Part shown: in pieces, positions 53,194 through 57,583 of the stretch
How positions within the stretch are numbered: the stretch's first letter is position 1
Layout of the letters: each line of letters begins with the position of its first letter
Virus record (IMG/VR): IMGVR_UViG_3300047560_000921
Span: 1-64,000 of that record
DNA: 64,000 nucleotides
Strand: one strand, 5' to 3'
Position numbers and translations under genes: made by a program
The notes under the pieces: model-generated
Database searches by the model: none
What the model was told of the DNA's origin: nothing
The model's input: the letters and a program-made list of their open reading frames with translations, nothing else

Positions 53194-53388
53194 ATGCAAT
53201 TCGTTAGCTCTTTCGAAAAAGACCAGAAGGCCATACAAAAAGATTTAATGCTATTAGCCATATACAGCGGAATGCCTTACAGCGAAATCTATAACTTATG
53301 CCCAGAAGAACGCAATGCTCTTTCCGAGGCATTACAGTATAAAGCTGAACAAGAAGAAAGAGCAATGAAAGAATCGACAAGAAGATAA
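53194..53388 (+). CDS. gp51-like / tail-chaperone extension ORF, possibly made as a frameshift fusion
   Basis: 'GMPYSEIYNLCPEER' resembles tail-chaperone C-terminal extensions; no strong SD. Confidence 0.6.
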   Translation: MQFVSSFEKDQKAIQKDLMLLAIYSGMPYSEIYNLCPEERNALSEALQYKAEQEERAMKESTRR

Positions 53389-53863
53389 TAGCTGTGTAAA
53401 CACAGCTTATTCTTCACTTTACTGCGTAAAGCTCGAATAATTTATTGTTTAATAATTGTTGAATGATTAAGTATTATCCTGAGTTCAGTCACACTTAGCC
53501 TTAAGCAAAGGCCAAGTATTCGAGACATTATCCTTCATCCATATGTCACACTCTAAATAAGCAACTTGTTTTGACCAAGTAAGGGCGGTTCCGCTGTACC
53601 CTTTTACGCTAGACTTAAACGCAACTACACAACACTTTTAGAGCAGTTTGTGTAACCTGTGAGTTGTAATTGTCAACAGAGCTCACTCTTTTCAGCTTTA
53701 CATATACTAAACCCAGTTCTTTTCAAGCAATTGAACTTCGTCCTGTTAAGGATAGTGGTTTTAGTCTCTGCTACGGCGCAGAAGTTCCATCCCTGTGCTC
53801 ACGCTTGGCCAGGTATAGGATCCCTTAATATGCGGCCGGGACTGGGCCTTTCCGTAGTTGTTA
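53389..53863 (-). ncRNA. candidate large structured non-coding RNA (~475 nt), family unrecognised
   Basis: Only long ORF-free gap in the window; at least 9 hairpins, several needing G-U pairs possible only on the minus strand; putative 8-bp pseudoknot. Confidence 0.6.
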
Positions 53864-54292
53864 TTAGAGTTTGTTTATAATGTGGGAGCCATGGACGCGA
53901 ACTTGAATGTGCCCGTTGTAATAATCTGCTGATTCCAGTACTCTGTGAGTAAACTGTTCTCTAGCTTCTATGTACGAGCATTGAGCCTTAGATGTACAGT
54001 AAAATAAGATTTCTCTAGTAAAATTATCTTTACCTAGGGTCTCTACGTCCTTGTTGAGTTCAATGTTTGAGCCAAAATATTCGCGCCAATCAGAATCGAT
54101 TTTGCTACGAATTTTCTTTTTCTTTTTTGTGCCGTTTTTGAGTTTAACTGTTTTGTATGTGGTTTTAGAGAATTTTGCTAATTTCTTGCCGATGTATTTG
54201 CGGCCTGTTGCATTATTTGTGATAATGTAAACAAACCCAATACAATCTTCCGGAAGTGCTTCCACTTCAACTCCCTGATATAGCCAAGTCAT
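53864..54292 (-). CDS. stand-alone GIY-YIG family endonuclease (142 aa)
   Basis: GFVYIIT....RKYIGKK, 'YFGS', conserved E (YIEAREQ) and YYN; Lys-rich insertion; no C-terminal DNA-binding domain. Confidence 0.8.
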   Translation of the reverse strand: MTWLYQGVEVEALPEDCIGFVYIITNNATGRKYIGKKLAKFSKTTYKTVKLKNGTKKKKKIRSKIDSDWREYFGSNIELNKDVETLGKDNFTREILFYCTSKAQCSYIEAREQFTHRVLESADYYNGHIQVRVHGSHIINKL

Positions 54293-54309
54293 AGCTTACT
54301 ATATAGTCG

Positions 54310-54948
54310 TCATGCTTGATTTGTATCACTTTCAGGCGAAAAACCTAGCACCATGGGAAGTTTAGATAGTTGTATTCTATTAGAGTTTATAAGTTGAGCC
54401 GTTGCGTCTTGATAATATTGTTCTACTAATTCTATGGTTTCTGCTGTTTGGATTTTGTTATTAAATGTGTATCTTAAGGATTCTAGTTGAAAAACAGATG
54501 TTTCGTATTCTTCTTGTTTAAATTTTAAAAGTTTTTGTGCGCTATCTGCAGAGCAGTTATGTACGTGCTGGAACACATCGACCCACTGATCTATAGATTT
54601 TAAATTATTGTAAAATTGATGATTGCTGTAATTGTATTTTTCAAATTGAAAGTCTACTGCACTGTTTACATAATTGATAGCCAGTGCTTTAGCCCGCATG
54701 AACTGCAACTGCTTGAATTCTGTGGGATTAGTAGTCTTTGCTTTTTTGTATAGTATACGTTTTCCGTTGTCGTAAAACAACTGGTATGTGCAGTAAAGAT
54801 GCCAAACAGACAACTTAGTTTCACCGTTAAACACATTGTAGCTAAGATTGCTTTCAAAGTTAGGAGGCTGATTATCGATGTAATAACTCAGCCAAACTAC
54901 TTGGTCAGTAATTTGATCGACTAACATTTTAAATCGATGAATAGCCAT
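54310..54948 (-). CDS. hypothetical protein (212 aa), last gene of the enzyme cassette
   Basis: ORF track; overlaps the upstream gene. Confidence 0.7.
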   Translation of the reverse strand: MAIHRFKMLVDQITDQVVWLSYYIDNQPPNFESNLSYNVFNGETKLSVWHLYCTYQLFYDNGKRILYKKAKTTNPTEFKQLQFMRAKALAINYVNSAVDFQFEKYNYSNHQFYNNLKSIDQWVDVFQHVHNCSADSAQKLLKFKQEEYETSVFQLESLRYTFNNKIQTAETIELVEQYYQDATAQLINSNRIQLSKLPMVLGFSPESDTNQA

Positions 54949-55999
54949 CTATACTCCTTACATTGGAAAACTTTATTACTCCATCTTCTTCGTAAATTTG
55001 TGTCTTGTATGTTTGTCGCAATGACATGCGTTGACTAAATGCCTTTTGTTTATTCATGTAACTAACATCATTAGTTGCATTAACAATATATCGTTTAGGC
55101 CATAGCTTGTTGTCTATGTAGTTGTGGTATTCTGGATTAGTGCTCATGTACTCAAAACTAAACGTCATTACGTCGTCATCGTAGAAGAAACGGAATATTT
55201 TGTTTTGTGTAGCAATGTCGCTAAGGTCACCGGTCGTACTCCAGTACCATGGACGTATTAAGTCGTCTTGGTGATCCAATGCATTTGCCCACCACCAACT
55301 TAGTTGGTTAATAGACTTAATTTCAAAAGGAGCTTGTCTTGCTAGTTTGATAATTATATCCTGATACAGTGTCGAGTTATCAATCCTAGTAATGTATGGC
55401 AGTAAGTTAATCCACGGATCCATTAAATCTAAGTCGCTGACATTGCCTTTAGAAAATTTTAAAATATCTGTAGACCCTATGACATGGTCGCCCATGTCTC
55501 CCGTTACTAATAATACATTAGGGTCACTCATTAGCTTGGGATAGTTTAATGGAACGATAGGAATGTTTGGTAGTATGTCTCTGTAAAATAGTTCAGGATA
55601 CTCGCCAATACTATATGATGTCATGGCAAGATTAAATTTGCCTGCTTCTAAAAATTCTTTAAATTTAGGATGCTTACGTAATGATACCAATGCACATACG
55701 CTATCGATACCACCACTGTACATTAATGTTATAGTTCTATTGCCCGCAGTGGTATAAATCTTATCAGCAACAGAATCTAGTATACTGTAGTATCTATCTT
55801 CCCAGTCATTGGTTAAGTTCTCTAATTTATACTTGGGGTCTTTAACTATACTGTAGCAAGGAAGTTCGATAGTATCTTTTAATAAGTTAAACCGATCCAC
55901 AGGGAATTCAAAGTTACCCACAACATTACGAAAGCTAGCCCGGTAAGGCAGCTTATCATATGGCATGCTACTCCAATTGACCCACAAGTATTGCTTCAT
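54929..55999 (-). CDS. N-type ATP pyrophosphatase (asparagine-synthetase C-domain-like)
   Basis: PP-loop MYSGGIDS, 'VTGDMGD', no glutaminase domain. Confidence 0.7.
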   Translation of the reverse strand: MKQYLWVNWSSMPYDKLPYRASFRNVVGNFEFPVDRFNLLKDTIELPCYSIVKDPKYKLENLTNDWEDRYYSILDSVADKIYTTAGNRTITLMYSGGIDSVCALVSLRKHPKFKEFLEAGKFNLAMTSYSIGEYPELFYRDILPNIPIVPLNYPKLMSDPNVLLVTGDMGDHVIGSTDILKFSKGNVSDLDLMDPWINLLPYITRIDNSTLYQDIIIKLARQAPFEIKSINQLSWWWANALDHQDDLIRPWYWSTTGDLSDIATQNKIFRFFYDDDVMTFSFEYMSTNPEYHNYIDNKLWPKRYIVNATNDVSYMNKQKAFSQRMSLRQTYKTQIYEEDGVIKFSNVRSIDGYSSI

Positions 56000-57072
56000 G
56001 CATTTGGTCCGCTGAGTTTTCTAGTAGCCACTAAGTTGTGCGTATGCGGCGTAGTAAGGTATGTAATTAAGTCAGCAATAGGAGTTGCGATTACTTGCCC
56101 GCTACTAATACCACCGGCAGCTTCATCGACATACGCTTGATATAGCATTTCTTTGCCTGAGTTAAAGTTTTTTCCTTGTAGCTGTTCAAAGCCTGTGTAT
56201 TTTCTAGCAGGTAACATTTCTGGCCATTCACGCTGAGTCATCAACGGCTTGAACAACATATGGAAACAACGCCACCACATTCTGGGATGTGGTAACCAGC
56301 GTATAAACACTTCGTAGATAACATCTTGTGTGTTTAAAAAGTCTTTTACAGCAGGATCAGTTAAGTATGCAACAATTAGCTCAGGGGTGTAAAGATAAAA
56401 TTTACTAGTACCCTCGTAACCCATGGCCATCATGTGTTGCATAATTGGCAAAGGGGTTTGCCACCAAACTGGCTTTGCAACTCCGGGCACGTTATCTAGT
56501 TCGGGTAAATCTAAATCAGGAGTTAATGTTTTCTTATAAGGTGCAAATACAATGTCTCCGCCTGCCATAATATAACAGTAGTCGGGACAAATAAAATCCA
56601 TAGTAGCACATTGCAACAAAACGTGAACACCAGTGAATCCATACTTTGCCGCGTACTCTTTGCCCTTAGTTGCATAAAATTCATCAGGATTAATTTTAAA
56701 ATCGATGTATTCTATGTTGTACTTTTCGCAAAAAGCATAAGCATTTTTAATGTCATGGTCGTTGAGTATGCGCCCGTCGGCATCAACCATACTAACGATA
56801 ACAGTTTTAAAAGGAATGTCGGCTTGCATAAAACTCAAACATGCCATTTGACTATCACTGCCGCCACTGAGTCCTACACAAATAGGCTTAGTAGCTTTAC
56901 TGGCAATTAGTCTAGCAGTGTTAATACATTCCTGTCTGAATGATTGTATAGGCCTGGTTGTATGGCCTAACTGTATTTGATATTGTTTAGTGGGATCGGG
57001 CTTGTTGTACCACTCGCCGCCAAATCCCCATTTAAAATGGTTGTTTTCTGTGTATTCAAACTTTAAGTCCAT
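55996..57072 (-). CDS. N-type ATP pyrophosphatase (asparagine-synthetase C-domain-like)
   Basis: PP-loop GLSGGSDS, 'MAGGD', 'RKYTGFE'; probable start MDLKFEY at 57072. Confidence 0.7.
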   Translation of the reverse strand: MDLKFEYTENNHFKWGFGGEWYNKPDPTKQYQIQLGHTTRPIQSFRQECINTARLIASKATKPICVGLSGGSDSQMACLSFMQADIPFKTVIVSMVDADGRILNDHDIKNAYAFCEKYNIEYIDFKINPDEFYATKGKEYAAKYGFTGVHVLLQCATMDFICPDYCYIMAGGDIVFAPYKKTLTPDLDLPELDNVPGVAKPVWWQTPLPIMQHMMAMGYEGTSKFYLYTPELIVAYLTDPAVKDFLNTQDVIYEVFIRWLPHPRMWWRCFHMLFKPLMTQREWPEMLPARKYTGFEQLQGKNFNSGKEMLYQAYVDEAAGGISSGQVIATPIADLITYLTTPHTHNLVATRKLSGPNA

Positions 57073-57583
57073 AATGTTCATTCCACCACTGTGTGTTTTT
57101 AAATCCAACGGATCTAATAGGTCTCTTAAACGGCAACTTTAGTTTCCAAATCAAGTAAGAACTAAATGTGTTGCAGTTTGCTTTTAATAAATTAAACTCT
57201 GTAATAGGATAGCTTTTTGTTGCATACAATATGTCACTAAAGTCTACAGCAGGACAGCTATCAATGATTTTTACTTTGTGGCCAAACCAACGAGCATTGT
57301 ATACTCTGTTAGTGATATAAGGAGCACGTTCATAATAGTCCATGGTACCTGCATAGATAGCATTGCATTTTTGCACATCTAGCGTTTCTCGGTCTGTAAC
57401 TTCCGCAACAAACCAAACCCCGCGAGATTTATCATAGCAGGCTATAAACGAATGGGTACCGCCCAGCAACCCTTTAAGGTGCCAGGCAGTAGCGTGTAGA
57501 TAATATGTTTTCTCTGTGTCTAATATTAAATCAAAGTCTTGACTAATATCGCACTGTTTCCAATCTTTAAACAGCATGATCAA
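57056..57583 (-). CDS. permuted papain-like Cys hydrolase (DUF3750/PPPDE-like)
   Basis: N-terminal His 'GGTHSFI', 'RWFG', 'SYP', C-terminal nucleophile motif 'NCNTF'. Confidence 0.6.
   Translation of the reverse strand: MIMLFKDWKQCDISQDFDLILDTEKTYYLHATAWHLKGLLGGTHSFIACYDKSRGVWFVAEVTDRETLDVQKCNAIYAGTMDYYERAPYITNRVYNARWFGHKVKIIDSCPAVDFSDILYATKSYPITEFNLLKANCNTFSSYLIWKLKLPFKRPIRSVGFKNTQWWNEHYGLKV

What the first reader, a model, noticed from the sequence alone, without database searches (positions are those of the whole stretch)
53389..54305. Candidate novel system: ~475-nt highly structured ncRNA transcribed directly behind a stand-alone GIY-YIG nuclease
Seen: this is the only long non-coding stretch in 64 kb and it starts at the nuclease stop codon. 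Minus-strand helices: UCUGC/GCAGA (53767-82); a junction closed by ACUAAA/UUUAGU holding UCCU-UAAC-AGGA (53741-52) and AGUUC/GAACU (53715-37); GUGA..GUUG/CAAC-UCAC (53659-86); UUACACAA/UUGUGUAG (53625-55); AAGG..GCG/CGC-CCUU (53581-603); ACUUG/CAAGU (53564-80); ACUUGGCCUU/AAGGCUAAGU (53493-517); GCUUUAC/GUAAAGU; and a terminal AGCUGUG/CACAGCU. Several helices need G-U pairs that would be A-C mismatches on the plus strand, which favours a minus-strand RNA over a DNA element. The nuclease is only the catalytic domain plus a Lys-rich insertion (KTVKLKNGTKKKKKIRSK), with no DNA-recognition domain. A late-box variant (TATATA, 54300-54305) sits 7 nt before its ATG, the same spacing as at the portal gene. 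Inference: nuclease and RNA form one late transcript and possibly an RNP, either RNA-assisted targeting analogous to HEARO/OMEGA loci or a ribozyme/structural virion RNA. I do not recognise the family and cannot show a guide segment.
Basis: partly seen in the sequence, partly recalled or inferred. Interest (0 to 1): 0.85.

Follow-up and report, generated by a model that had tools for sequence, protein, structure and literature searches.

The report
Large modular phage RNA behind nuclease
The stretch is a real, about 460-base, intricately folded non-coding RNA of an uncultured freshwater jumbo phage; its first third is the already catalogued "Polynucleobacter-1" motif, its function is still unknown, and the data do not support the idea that it guides the neighbouring nuclease.

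Summary
Window 53390-53847 (minus strand) encodes a structured RNA that starts just after the stop codon of a 142-aa GIY-YIG nuclease gene.

It is not an unrecognised family. Bases 53706-53847 match Rfam RF01718 (Polynucleobacter-1 RNA) at 91.6 bits against a cut-off of 37. The 2010 description already noted that the motif lies downstream of a gene family related to P-SSM2 gene 218, and I show that this gene is a homologue of the nuclease.

New here:
- The Rfam motif is only the 5' third of a 390-540-nt RNA.
- Across 111 non-redundant copies, 76 base pairs are 94% canonical. 59 of them show compensatory changes, and two pseudoknots are supported.
- G-U outnumbers A-C 9:1, which fixes the strand.
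- The family has at least three interchangeable 5' "heads" on one universal 3' module.
- Heads are swapped between near-identical phages, with one breakpoint at the nuclease stop codon.

RNA and nuclease are adjacent in about 97% of contigs. However, the nuclease sequence does not track RNA type, cultured-phage homologues lack the RNA, a few RNAs lack the nuclease, and no guide-like segment was found.

Best reading: an autonomous structured RNA co-transcribed with the nuclease gene. Its function is unknown.

The parts
53864..54292 (-). Gene for a 142-aa stand-alone GIY-YIG nuclease (SegE-type catalytic domain only)
   Evidence: Pfam PF19835, E 6.5e-33, whole profile matched. AlphaFold model pLDDT 82; best PDB fold match is the I-TevI catalytic domain 1LN0, probability 0.99. 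GIY/YIG tyrosines, R93, E109 and N126 are invariant in 25 homologues.
53390..53847 (-). Full-length structured RNA of about 458 nt; 475 nt if counted from the stop codon at 53863
   Evidence: The whole stretch aligns with relatives. Covariation is shown. There is one copy per genome.
53706..53847 (-). 5' domain, equal to the Rfam RF01718 Polynucleobacter-1 motif. Helices: P1 53842-38/53824-20; P2 53812-06/53801-793; P3 53782-78/53771-67; P4 53765-57/53714-06; P5 53752-49/53744-41; P6 53737-33/53719-15
   Evidence: cmscan 91.6 bits against a gathering score of 37, model positions 1-141 of 141. Pairing checked and covariation.
53659..53686 (-). P7 hairpin (GUGA+GUUG / CAAC+UCAC)
   Evidence: Pairs in the window. 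The equivalent hairpin covaries in the family.
53625..53655 (-). P8 hairpin (8 bp). Its loop at 53643-53637 forms pseudoknot PK1
   Evidence: 5-6 pair types per position in the family.
53551..53557 (-). 3' strand of pseudoknot PK1 (UUUAGAG), pairing with CUCUAAA at 53643-53637
   Evidence: 7 of 7 bases pair in the window. In typical members the pairing is UUAGCGU with ACGCUAA. Mutual information and 96-99% canonical pairing support it.
53581..53625 (-). Core segment. Contains the PK2 5' strand (53625-21), the P10 5' strand (53610-07), and hairpin P11 (53603-598/53586-81), whose loop (53594-88) pairs with the PK2 5' strand
   Evidence: PK2 covaries GUUGU/ACAAC, GUCAU/AUGAC and, in class B, GUUGA/UCAAC. 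P10 shows up to 5 pair types. Pairing in the window checked.
53560..53580 (-). Lineage-specific inserted hairpin (53580-76/53568-64) followed by the P10 3' strand (53563-60)
   Evidence: Other members carry different insertions at the same site.
53528..53552 (-). Repeat unit 1 (GUGUGAC..GGAUGA)
   Evidence: Conserved in all three RNA classes. Its G/C state is tied to that of unit 2.
53493..53517 (-). H1 hairpin (10 bp)
53468..53497 (-). Repeat unit 2 (GUGUGAC..AGGAUAA)
53409..53438 (-). H3: outer stem 53438-35/53412-09, conserved GA / GAA internal loop, inner stem 53432-26/53422-16
   Evidence: Family alignments. Covariation. The 3' arms are placed one base above the coordinates tried, read from the sequence.
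53390..53407 (-). H4 terminal hairpin, at the point where the nuclease unit and the baseplate unit converge
   Evidence: It is terminator-like on both strands in the window. All 6 pairs covary. In the family the U-tract is weak on the RNA strand: mean 3.1 U in the 10 nt after H4, against 4.8 on the other strand.
54298..54306 (-). CTATATAGT just upstream of the nuclease ATG; possible promoter element, unverified
   Evidence: Shared with close relatives L003, L037 and L047. Other relatives have ATAACTA/ATAATTA at this place. It is not enriched in the window.

Best explanation
This is a genuine, autonomously folding, large non-coding RNA of an uncultured freshwater T4-like jumbo phage.

Shown:
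- The phage contig is 231 kb, and complete relatives are about 350 kb.
- The RNA's 5' third is the Rfam Polynucleobacter-1 motif.
- The full molecule is about 390-540 nt (458 nt here) and has three parts:
  1. A variable 5' 'head', which exists in at least three structural classes.
  2. A double-pseudoknotted core.
  3. A universal 3' module: two copies of a GUGAC..CUNGAUGA motif flanking a hairpin, then a hairpin with a GA/GAA internal loop, then a terminal hairpin.

Inferred:
- It is made by read-through of the GIY-YIG nuclease gene, as the 3' part of that transcript.
- It ends at or near hairpin H4, where transcription converges with the baseplate genes.
- It acts through its three-dimensional architecture as a scaffold, protein-binding platform or catalytic RNA, in the manner of other large ornate phage-associated RNAs.
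- It does not act as a base-pairing guide for the nuclease.
- The nuclease is an ordinary conserved catalytic-domain-only GIY-YIG enzyme. Its adjacency to the RNA reflects a shared, vertically inherited transcription unit.
- The heads are exchanged between related phages by recombination. That suggests the head is the specificity-determining or selected part and the 3' module is the common functional platform.

The molecular function remains unknown.
For: Identity:
- RF01718 match at 91.6 bits.
- P-SSM2 gene 218, named in the 2010 description (PMC2864571 supplement), is a homologue of the nuclease (36% identity, E 1e-19).

Structure:
- 76 pairs are 93.9% canonical; 59 show compensatory changes.
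- Two pseudoknots were recovered by mutual information on a structure-blind alignment.
- G-U to A-C is 952:105.
- The 3' module is confirmed on 88 independent sequences.

Full length: the distance from stop codon to the end of H4 has a median of 435 nt, range 388-539, in 52 loci.

Co-transcription: the RNA starts 0-50 nt after the stop codon, on the same strand.

Fixed synteny: gp46-like ATPase, then accessory genes, then nuclease, then RNA, then the convergent baseplate module.

Modularity:
- Classes B and C lack any Rfam hit but share the 3' module, and class B also shares the core.
- Mosaic breakpoints lie at the nuclease stop codon and inside the 3' module.

Against guidance by the RNA:
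- No guide-like complementarity.
- No co-variation between nuclease residues and RNA type; 9 switches on the nuclease tree.
- Nuclease homologues in cultured phages lack the RNA.
- L311 has a complete RNA with no nuclease upstream, and L252 has a PD-(D/E)XK nuclease there instead.
Against: - No direct evidence of a discrete stable transcript. Metatranscriptome contigs from four freshwater runs cover the RNA and its flanks at similarly low depth (2-4), are unstranded, and could be DNA carry-over.
- The adjacency to a nuclease gene is extremely tight: 97 of 101, 103 of 103 and 41 of 44. The one clear replacement is by another nuclease. This is what a functional partnership would also predict.
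- The nuclease has a conserved Lys-rich beta-hairpin arm that could bind RNA.
- H4 is a poor intrinsic terminator in most members, so the 3' end is not defined.
Confidence: 0.55

Rival explanations
1. The RNA and the GIY-YIG nuclease form a ribonucleoprotein. The RNA recruits, targets, activates or restrains the minimal nuclease, which lacks a DNA-binding domain. This is functionally analogous to HEARO/omega-RNA with IscB.
For: - About 97% adjacency in both sampling directions.
- The nuclease consists of the catalytic domain only, with a conserved basic beta-hairpin.
- In L252 a PD-(D/E)XK endonuclease occupies the nuclease position.
- A variable head on a constant module is the layout expected of a specificity part plus a protein-binding part.
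Against: - No unstructured hypervariable segment. The variable parts are themselves folded helices with covariation.
- No complementarity to the phage's own contig.
- No nuclease residue correlates with RNA state, and sister nucleases L074 and L076 carry different RNA classes.
- Homologues at 36-51% identity in cultured phages have no such RNA.
- L311 has a complete RNA with no nuclease upstream.
- From my own knowledge, stand-alone GIY-YIG catalytic domains such as T4 endonuclease II work without RNA.
Confidence: 0.15
2. It is a cis-acting 3' untranslated element of the nuclease transcript. It could be an exonuclease block or stabiliser, an insulator or terminator between convergent transcription units, or a sensor that sets nuclease expression.
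For: - Its position is at the 3' end of the unit, at a convergence point.
- The terminal hairpin is terminator-like in the window.
- P1 abuts or overlaps the stop codon.
Against: - About 450 nt with 19 helices, two pseudoknots and many invariant unpaired bases is far more than such roles need.
- The RNA persists behind unrelated inserted ORFs and, in L311, without the nuclease.
- H4 lacks a U-tract in most members.
Confidence: 0.12
3. It is a ribozyme. It could be self-processing, releasing itself from the mRNA, or trans-acting, with the double-pseudoknot core as the active site and the heads as peripheral stabilisers.
For: - Compact pseudoknotted core with invariant junction nucleotides.
- Peripheral domains are interchangeable while the core and 3' module are kept.
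- The RNA must be separated from a coding transcript.
Against: - No match to any ribozyme family in Rfam at E <= 1.
- Class C lacks the class A/B core motif, so the only universal part is the 3' module, which is made of simple hairpins.
- No cleavage site can be inferred.
Confidence: 0.08
4. It is a DNA-level element, such as a replication origin, a packaging site, or the homing or recognition site of the adjacent endonuclease. The head swaps would then be co-conversion tracts.
For: - Head replacement has a breakpoint exactly at the end of the nuclease gene, which resembles co-conversion next to free-standing homing endonuclease genes.
- The nuclease has a Seg-type domain.
Against: - The 9:1 excess of G-U over A-C and the compensatory changes show selection on a single-stranded RNA of one strand.
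- The nuclease is universal and syntenic rather than sporadic.
- The nuclease sequence does not differ between RNA classes.
- The nuclease has no DNA-binding domain.
Confidence: 0.03

Closest known systems
Polynucleobacter-1 RNA motif (Rfam RF01718; Weinberg et al. 2010, PMC2864571)
   Same: - The window's 53706-53847 matches the whole model at 91.6 bits, with the same helices P1-P6.
- The genetic context is the same, downstream of the GOS11034 / P-SSM2 gp218-like gene.
   Different: - The catalogued motif is 141 nt, typed as sRNA or possible cis-regulator, and 'not detected in any sequenced purified phage'.
- Here it is the 5' third of a 390-540-nt RNA carried by T4-like jumbo-phage contigs.
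- The full RNA has a pseudoknotted core and a 3' module that is also joined to two other, uncatalogued head types.
HEARO / omega-RNA with IscB, and TnpB reRNA (OMEGA systems)
   Same: A large structured RNA from the same generation of comparative-genomics discoveries, encoded next to a small nuclease gene.
   Different: - No Rfam HEARO match.
- The nuclease has a GIY-YIG fold, not RuvC/HNH.
- The RNA lies 3' of the gene.
- No guide segment and no transposon ends.
- The nuclease does not co-vary with the RNA.
GOLLD, ROOL and OLE large ornate RNAs (cryo-EM multimers: bioRxiv 10.1101/2024.12.08.627333)
   Same: - More than 400 nt, many covarying helices and pseudoknots, unknown function, and linked to phages or prophages.
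- From my own knowledge, GOLLD also has a conserved 3' half and variable 5' halves; the 2010 supplement lists GOLLD-Strep5 and GOLLD-other5 alignments.
   Different: - No sequence or structure match to those Rfam families.
- Here the RNA is fixed behind a nuclease gene rather than near tRNAs.
- Multimerisation is untested.
T4 Seg-type free-standing GIY-YIG homing endonucleases and the I-TevI catalytic domain
   Same: The nuclease matches the Pfam SegE GIY-YIG domain and the I-TevI catalytic-domain fold, with the catalytic residues intact.
   Different: - Only 142 aa, with no C-terminal DNA-binding domain.
- Universal, syntenic and 54-96% identical across hundreds of contigs, rather than sporadic.
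Group I intron carrying a GIY-YIG homing endonuclease gene
   Same: A GIY-YIG gene physically joined to a large pseudoknotted RNA in a T4-like phage.
   Different: - No interrupted host gene; the region lies between convergent genes.
- Only 17 nt separate the upstream ORF from the nuclease start.
- No group I intron match in Rfam.

Membership tests
Rfam RF01718 Polynucleobacter-1 RNA | Covariance-model score at or above the curated gathering score (37 bits) over the full model | tested here: met
   91.6 bits, E 2.8e-18, model positions 1-141 of 141, not truncated.
Rfam RF01718 Polynucleobacter-1 RNA | Located downstream of a GOS11034 / P-SSM2 gp218-like gene (2010 description) | tested here: met
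   The upstream ORF is 36% identical to PSSM2_218, E 1e-19.
Rfam RF01718 Polynucleobacter-1 RNA | Helices of the model are supported by compensatory changes in related sequences | tested here: met
   P1, P2, P4 and P6 each have pairs changed on both sides in 10-40 of 111 sequences.
OMEGA-type RNA-guided nuclease (HEARO/IscB, TnpB) | Nuclease with a RuvC (with or without HNH) fold | tested here: not met
   PF19835 GIY-YIG; best fold match is the I-TevI catalytic domain.
OMEGA-type RNA-guided nuclease (HEARO/IscB, TnpB) | RNA matches the HEARO / omega-RNA family | tested here: not met
   No such hit at gathering threshold, or at E <= 1.
OMEGA-type RNA-guided nuclease (HEARO/IscB, TnpB) | An unstructured, hypervariable guide segment at one end of a conserved scaffold | tested here: not met
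   The variable parts are folded, covarying domains or insertion hairpins. There is no above-chance complementarity to the phage's own 231-kb contig.
Group I intron with homing endonuclease gene | Interrupts a conserved gene and matches the group I core | tested here: not met
   It lies between convergent genes, and there is no RF00028 hit at E <= 1.
Seg-type free-standing homing endonuclease | N-terminal GIY-YIG catalytic domain | tested here: met
   PF19835, E 6.5e-33.
Seg-type free-standing homing endonuclease | C-terminal DNA-binding domain (total length about 200-250 aa; my own knowledge of T4 SegA-G) | tested here: not met
   142 aa. The Pfam domain covers residues 3-129, and the tail is disordered in the model.
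Seg-type free-standing homing endonuclease | Sporadic presence among otherwise collinear phage genomes | tested here: not met
   Present at one syntenic place in all related contigs sampled. More than 8000 homologues of about 142 aa were found.
Large ornate RNAs (GOLLD / ROOL / OLE kind) | More than 400 nt with many covarying helices and pseudoknots, and no coding potential | tested here: met
   19 helices, 2 pseudoknots, 76 pairs. The ORFs overlapping it are not conserved outside the closest relatives.
Large ornate RNAs (GOLLD / ROOL / OLE kind) | Homology to one of those families | tested here: not met
   No Rfam hit other than RF01718.
Large ornate RNAs (GOLLD / ROOL / OLE kind) | Forms RNA-only multimers | not testable with these tools
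   Needs native gels, SEC-MALS or cryo-EM.
Rho-independent terminator (for hairpin H4) | GC-rich stem followed by a U-tract | tested here: inconclusive
   The window passes the simple scan on both strands. In 62 relatives the RNA-strand tail has a mean of 3.1 U in 10 nt, and the opposite strand 4.8.

The most novel reading that the evidence does not exclude
The extended Polynucleobacter-1 RNA is the RNA subunit of a new kind of phage ribonucleoprotein built around a minimal GIY-YIG nuclease, or around another dimeric partner that reads the two repeated motifs. The swappable structured heads would set what the complex recognises. That would be an RNA-dependent nuclease system outside the RuvC/HNH world. 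Alternatively, the RNA is a new ribozyme or a self-assembling RNA.
Probability: 0.12. Interest if true: 0.9.

Novelty: new variant of a known kind. Interest (0 to 1): 0.6.

Why it matters
Bacterial and phage RNAs longer than 400 nt with complex conserved folds are rare. Each class has proved informative: HEARO turned out to be the guide RNA of IscB, and GOLLD, ROOL and OLE form unexpected assemblies.

This work does four things:
- It re-defines a 2010 'orphan' Rfam motif as one head of a three-times larger, modular RNA.
- It places that RNA in abundant uncultured freshwater jumbo phages.
- It provides a testable secondary structure with two pseudoknots.
- It documents head swapping between near-identical phages, and a strict same-letter coupling between two repeated motifs.

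It also tempers the attractive 'RNA-guided GIY-YIG nuclease' idea with concrete negative evidence, and it defines the experiments that would settle the question.

Tried and rejected
- **Nucleotide search against cultured phages.** blastn of the locus found no match.
- **Pattern scan of bacterial genomes.** A degenerate pattern for repeat unit 2 returned 120 stretches. None of them matched the 3'-domain HMM, so they are chance hits.
- **Single-sequence folding.** z = -2.1 on both strands, which does not discriminate.
- **RNAalifold on the full-length MAFFT alignment.** It recovered only 40 pairs because of insertions. I replaced it with domain-wise alignments and mutual information.
- **Regex anchoring.** My first attempts failed.
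- **Rfam scan of class B and C loci.** No hit.
- **PDB sequence search with the nuclease.** No hit.
- **Metatranscriptomes.** Only low-depth unstranded contigs from relatives, covering the RNA and its neighbours alike. This does not show transcription.
- **Guide hypothesis.** Short-match search of the RNA against the phage's own contig gave only chance-level matches; the best was 15 nt at E 0.085.
- **Nuclease-RNA co-evolution.** No discriminating column; the best frequency difference was 0.5.
- **Covariance model of the 3' module in cultured phages.** No credible hit in Melnitz, phiM12, S-SRM01 or P-SSM2. The best was E 0.04, far from the nuclease gene. The positive control scored E 1.7e-32.
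- **Resemblances considered by eye and not pursued.** RNase P, tmRNA, hammerhead, group II domain 5, k-turn / C'-D' box and 5S rRNA. They rest on short motifs only and have no Rfam support.
- **The 'late box' TATATA.** Not enriched in the window.
Full report
**What is there**

Window 53864-54292 (minus strand) encodes a 142-aa protein. It matches the whole Pfam SegE-type GIY-YIG domain (PF19835, E 6.5e-33). The 475 bases that follow, down to the stop codon of a convergent plus-strand ORF at 53388, have no conserved reading frame. They belong to the longest internal stretch of the window free of ORFs of 80 aa or more.

A scan of the whole window against Rfam gives a single hit. Bases 53706-53847, minus strand, match RF01718 (Polynucleobacter-1 RNA) over the full 141-position model at 91.6 bits, against a gathering score of 37.

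The only paper in the library that mentions the motif is its 2010 description. [quoted passage not shown] I fetched PSSM2_218. It is a homologue of the window's nuclease (36% identity, E 1e-19). The linkage of gene and RNA was therefore noted in 2010, but the gene was not recognised as a nuclease. GenBank records still label it 'NAD synthetase'.

**Origin**

The window is the first 64 kb of a 231-kb IMG/VR viral contig that CheckV rates 65% complete. A relative with terminal repeats is 346,856 bp and rated complete. The neighbours are a T4 baseplate protein (PF12322) and, in relatives, a gp46-like SMC/AAA protein and radical-SAM genes. The runs that hold related sequence are freshwater metatranscriptomes. 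This is an uncultured freshwater T4-like jumbo phage. The contig holds one copy of the RNA and one of the nuclease gene.

**The RNA is much larger than the Rfam motif**

- In 52 of 62 related loci, the distance from the nuclease stop codon to the end of the last conserved hairpin has a median of 435 nt, range 388-539.
- In the other ten, an extra ORF sits between the gene and the RNA.
- The entire stretch aligns among relatives.

I collected 129 copies below 95% identity. 111 of these are of the window's type, class A. On a structure-blind MAFFT alignment, mutual information recovers the Rfam helices P1-P6 and further elements:

- hairpins P7, P8 (two segments), P10 and P11
- 3' hairpins H1, H3 (two segments) and H4
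- pseudoknot PK1, which joins the P8 loop to the strand 3' of P10
- pseudoknot PK2, which joins the strand 5' of P10 to the P11 loop

The statistics are as follows:

| Measure | Value |
|---|---|
| Pairs defined | 76 |
| Pairs changed on both sides in at least two sequences | 59 |
| Cells canonical, real structure | 93.9% |
| Cells canonical, partner slid 1-3 columns | 34-43% |
| Cells canonical, partners shuffled | 77.6% (sd 0.24) |
| G-U cells vs A-C cells | 952 vs 105 |

The G-U excess puts the selection on an RNA of the nuclease's sense strand. A covariance model of the 3' module found exactly one copy in 93 of 95 further loci. On that alignment, 99.3% of cells pair against 67% when shuffled, and 11 of 12 pairs have changes on both sides.

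PK1 is a perfect 7-bp match (53643-53637 with 53557-53551). Its sequence differs entirely from the typical family sequence, which is itself a compensatory case. The window lineage (with L003, L037 and L047) is a divergent subgroup. It has an extra hairpin at 53564-53580 and a longer H3.

**A modular family**

Only 29 of 50 related records carry an RF01718 match, yet nearly all have the same-sized gap after the nuclease gene. Those without a match carry RNAs with other 5' parts.

- Class B shares the P11/PK2 core with class A. Its PK2 strands are compensated (GUUGA/UCAAC instead of GUUGU/ACAAC).
- Class C shares only the 3' module.
- Neither class hits any Rfam family.

The universal part, in order, is:

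1. repeat unit 1
2. hairpin H1
3. repeat unit 2
4. an optional UUCG hairpin and an A-rich linker
5. H3, with a conserved GA/GAA internal loop
6. H4

Pairs of phages whose flanks are 80-91% identical carry different classes. Similarity stops at the nuclease stop codon and resumes inside the 3' module. Heads are therefore exchanged as cassettes.

**Linkage to the nuclease**

Sampling from the nuclease side, a 3'-domain HMM hits 64 of 80 loci. Most of the rest lack enough downstream DNA.

Sampling from the RNA side, I scanned IMG/VR with class-specific strings and asked whether the GIY-YIG gene lies upstream on the same strand:

| RNA class | Matches with enough upstream DNA | With the nuclease gene upstream |
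|---|---|---|
| A | 101 | 97 |
| B | 103 | 103 |
| C | 44 | 41 |

The exceptions are:

- One chance match (L267).
- One locus cut too short to reach the gene (L230).
- L311, a complete RNA behind a divergently oriented gene.
- L252, where a PF24608 PD-(D/E)XK endonuclease gene takes the nuclease's place.
- Three class C head matches in other contexts (L482, L500, L505). The two that were searched, L482 and L500, lack a detectable 3' module.

In relatives P1 begins 0-50 nt after the stop codon and sometimes overlaps it. Read-through transcription from the nuclease gene is therefore the simplest way to make the RNA. Gene order around the pair is conserved, so the pair is inherited in place and is not a mobile cassette.

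**Does the RNA serve the nuclease?**

*The nuclease.* The AlphaFold model (pLDDT 82) is a GIY-YIG fold whose best PDB match is the I-TevI catalytic domain (probability 0.99). The Lys-rich segment forms a confident long beta-hairpin. The catalytic residues are invariant. The enzyme is probably active, and it has a basic arm that could bind nucleic acid.

*Evidence against an RNA-guided mechanism:*

- The variable parts of the RNA are folded domains, not a single-stranded spacer.
- The RNA has no above-chance complementarity elsewhere in the 231-kb contig.
- No column of the nuclease alignment tracks the RNA state. The state needs nine changes on the nuclease tree, at least five of them forced by well-supported branches.
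- Sister nucleases L074 and L076 carry class A and class C RNAs.
- Homologues in Melnitz, phiM12, S-SRM01 and hundreds of T4-like cyanophages are followed by gaps of only 28-148 nt. Their genomes have no credible match to the 3'-module model.

*What remains open.* These results do not exclude a structural partnership. The near-obligate adjacency and the L252 replacement by another nuclease keep that possibility alive. I put it at about 0.15.

**Transcription evidence**

This evidence is weak. Contigs from four freshwater RNA libraries, 85-99% identical to the window, cover most of 53371-53847. They also cover the nuclease gene and a neighbouring gene, at assembler depths of 2-4, without strand information. 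One 205-nt contig bridges the stop codon. None of this shows a discrete RNA.

H4 passes a simple terminator scan on both strands in the window. In the family, however, its tail is U-poor on the RNA strand.

**An unexplained regularity**

In 156 loci, the base before 'AU' in the two repeat units is G in both (135 loci) or C in both (21 loci). It is never mixed. The switch recurs across the nuclease tree. A same-letter coupling is not Watson-Crick covariation. It points to a symmetric contact between the units, or to a dimeric reader other than the nuclease.

**Verdict**

The interpretation as a novel RNA-guided nuclease system is not supported. The object is a new, much larger and modular version of a known orphan RNA family. 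It is most likely an autonomous structured RNA made from the 3' end of the nuclease transcript, and its function is unknown. It deserves experimental follow-up.

Noticed in passing
window 53468-53552; loci L003-L324: The two repeat units of the 3' module change in concert. The base before 'AU' is G,G in 135 loci and C,C in 21 loci, and never mixed. The switch recurs at least about 5 times on the nuclease tree and is independent of the nuclease sequence.
   Followed up: partly
L074 vs L076, L004 vs L041, L058 vs L044 (nuclease stop at about 3429): Related phages with 80-91% identical flanks carry different RNA classes. Similarity ends at the nuclease stop codon and resumes inside the RNA's 3' module. 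The 5' heads are therefore exchanged by recombination.
   Followed up: partly
L252:8819-9385 (+): In one contig a PF24608 phage PD-(D/E)XK endonuclease gene, not the GIY-YIG gene, sits directly upstream of a class A RNA.
   Followed up: partly
L311:1545-2034 (-); L482, L500, L505: There are rare copies without an upstream nuclease. L311 has a complete RNA next to a divergent 403-aa gene. Three class C head matches lie in other contexts, and the two that were searched (L482, L500) have no detectable 3' module.
   Followed up: partly
L084 (phiM12 gp201), L325 (P-SSM2 PSSM2_218), and many cyanophage records: GenBank/RefSeq records annotate homologues of this GIY-YIG nuclease as 'NAD synthetase'. 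This looks like a propagated mis-annotation.
   Followed up: no
30-45 nt upstream of the nuclease start in loci L004-L082; window 54298-54306: A recurring ATAACTA / ATAATTA / ACTAACTA motif, CTATATAG in the window lineage, lies 5-30 nt before the nuclease ATG. It may be a phage promoter element. The canonical T4 late box TATAAATA is rare in the window (2 matches, 5.4 expected).
   Followed up: partly
L011, L030, L036, L061 (between P11 and the 3' strand of P10): Some class A RNAs carry a 20-50-nt insertion made of repeated UAUAG-containing units. It sits at the same site where the window has its extra ACUUG/CAAGU hairpin.
   Followed up: no
window 54929-55999 and 55996-57108 (-): Two adjacent ORFs of 356 and 370 aa upstream of the nuclease unit contain SGGxDS-like motifs suggestive of PP-loop ATPases. 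The first has no Pfam hit at E 0.1, and the second was not scanned. Relatives have radical-SAM genes at this position.
   Followed up: no
S-SRM01 record NC_070963.1:163047-163206 (+): Weak match (E 0.04, 17 bits) of the 3'-module model, 16 kb away from that phage's nuclease homologue. It is probably noise.
   Followed up: no
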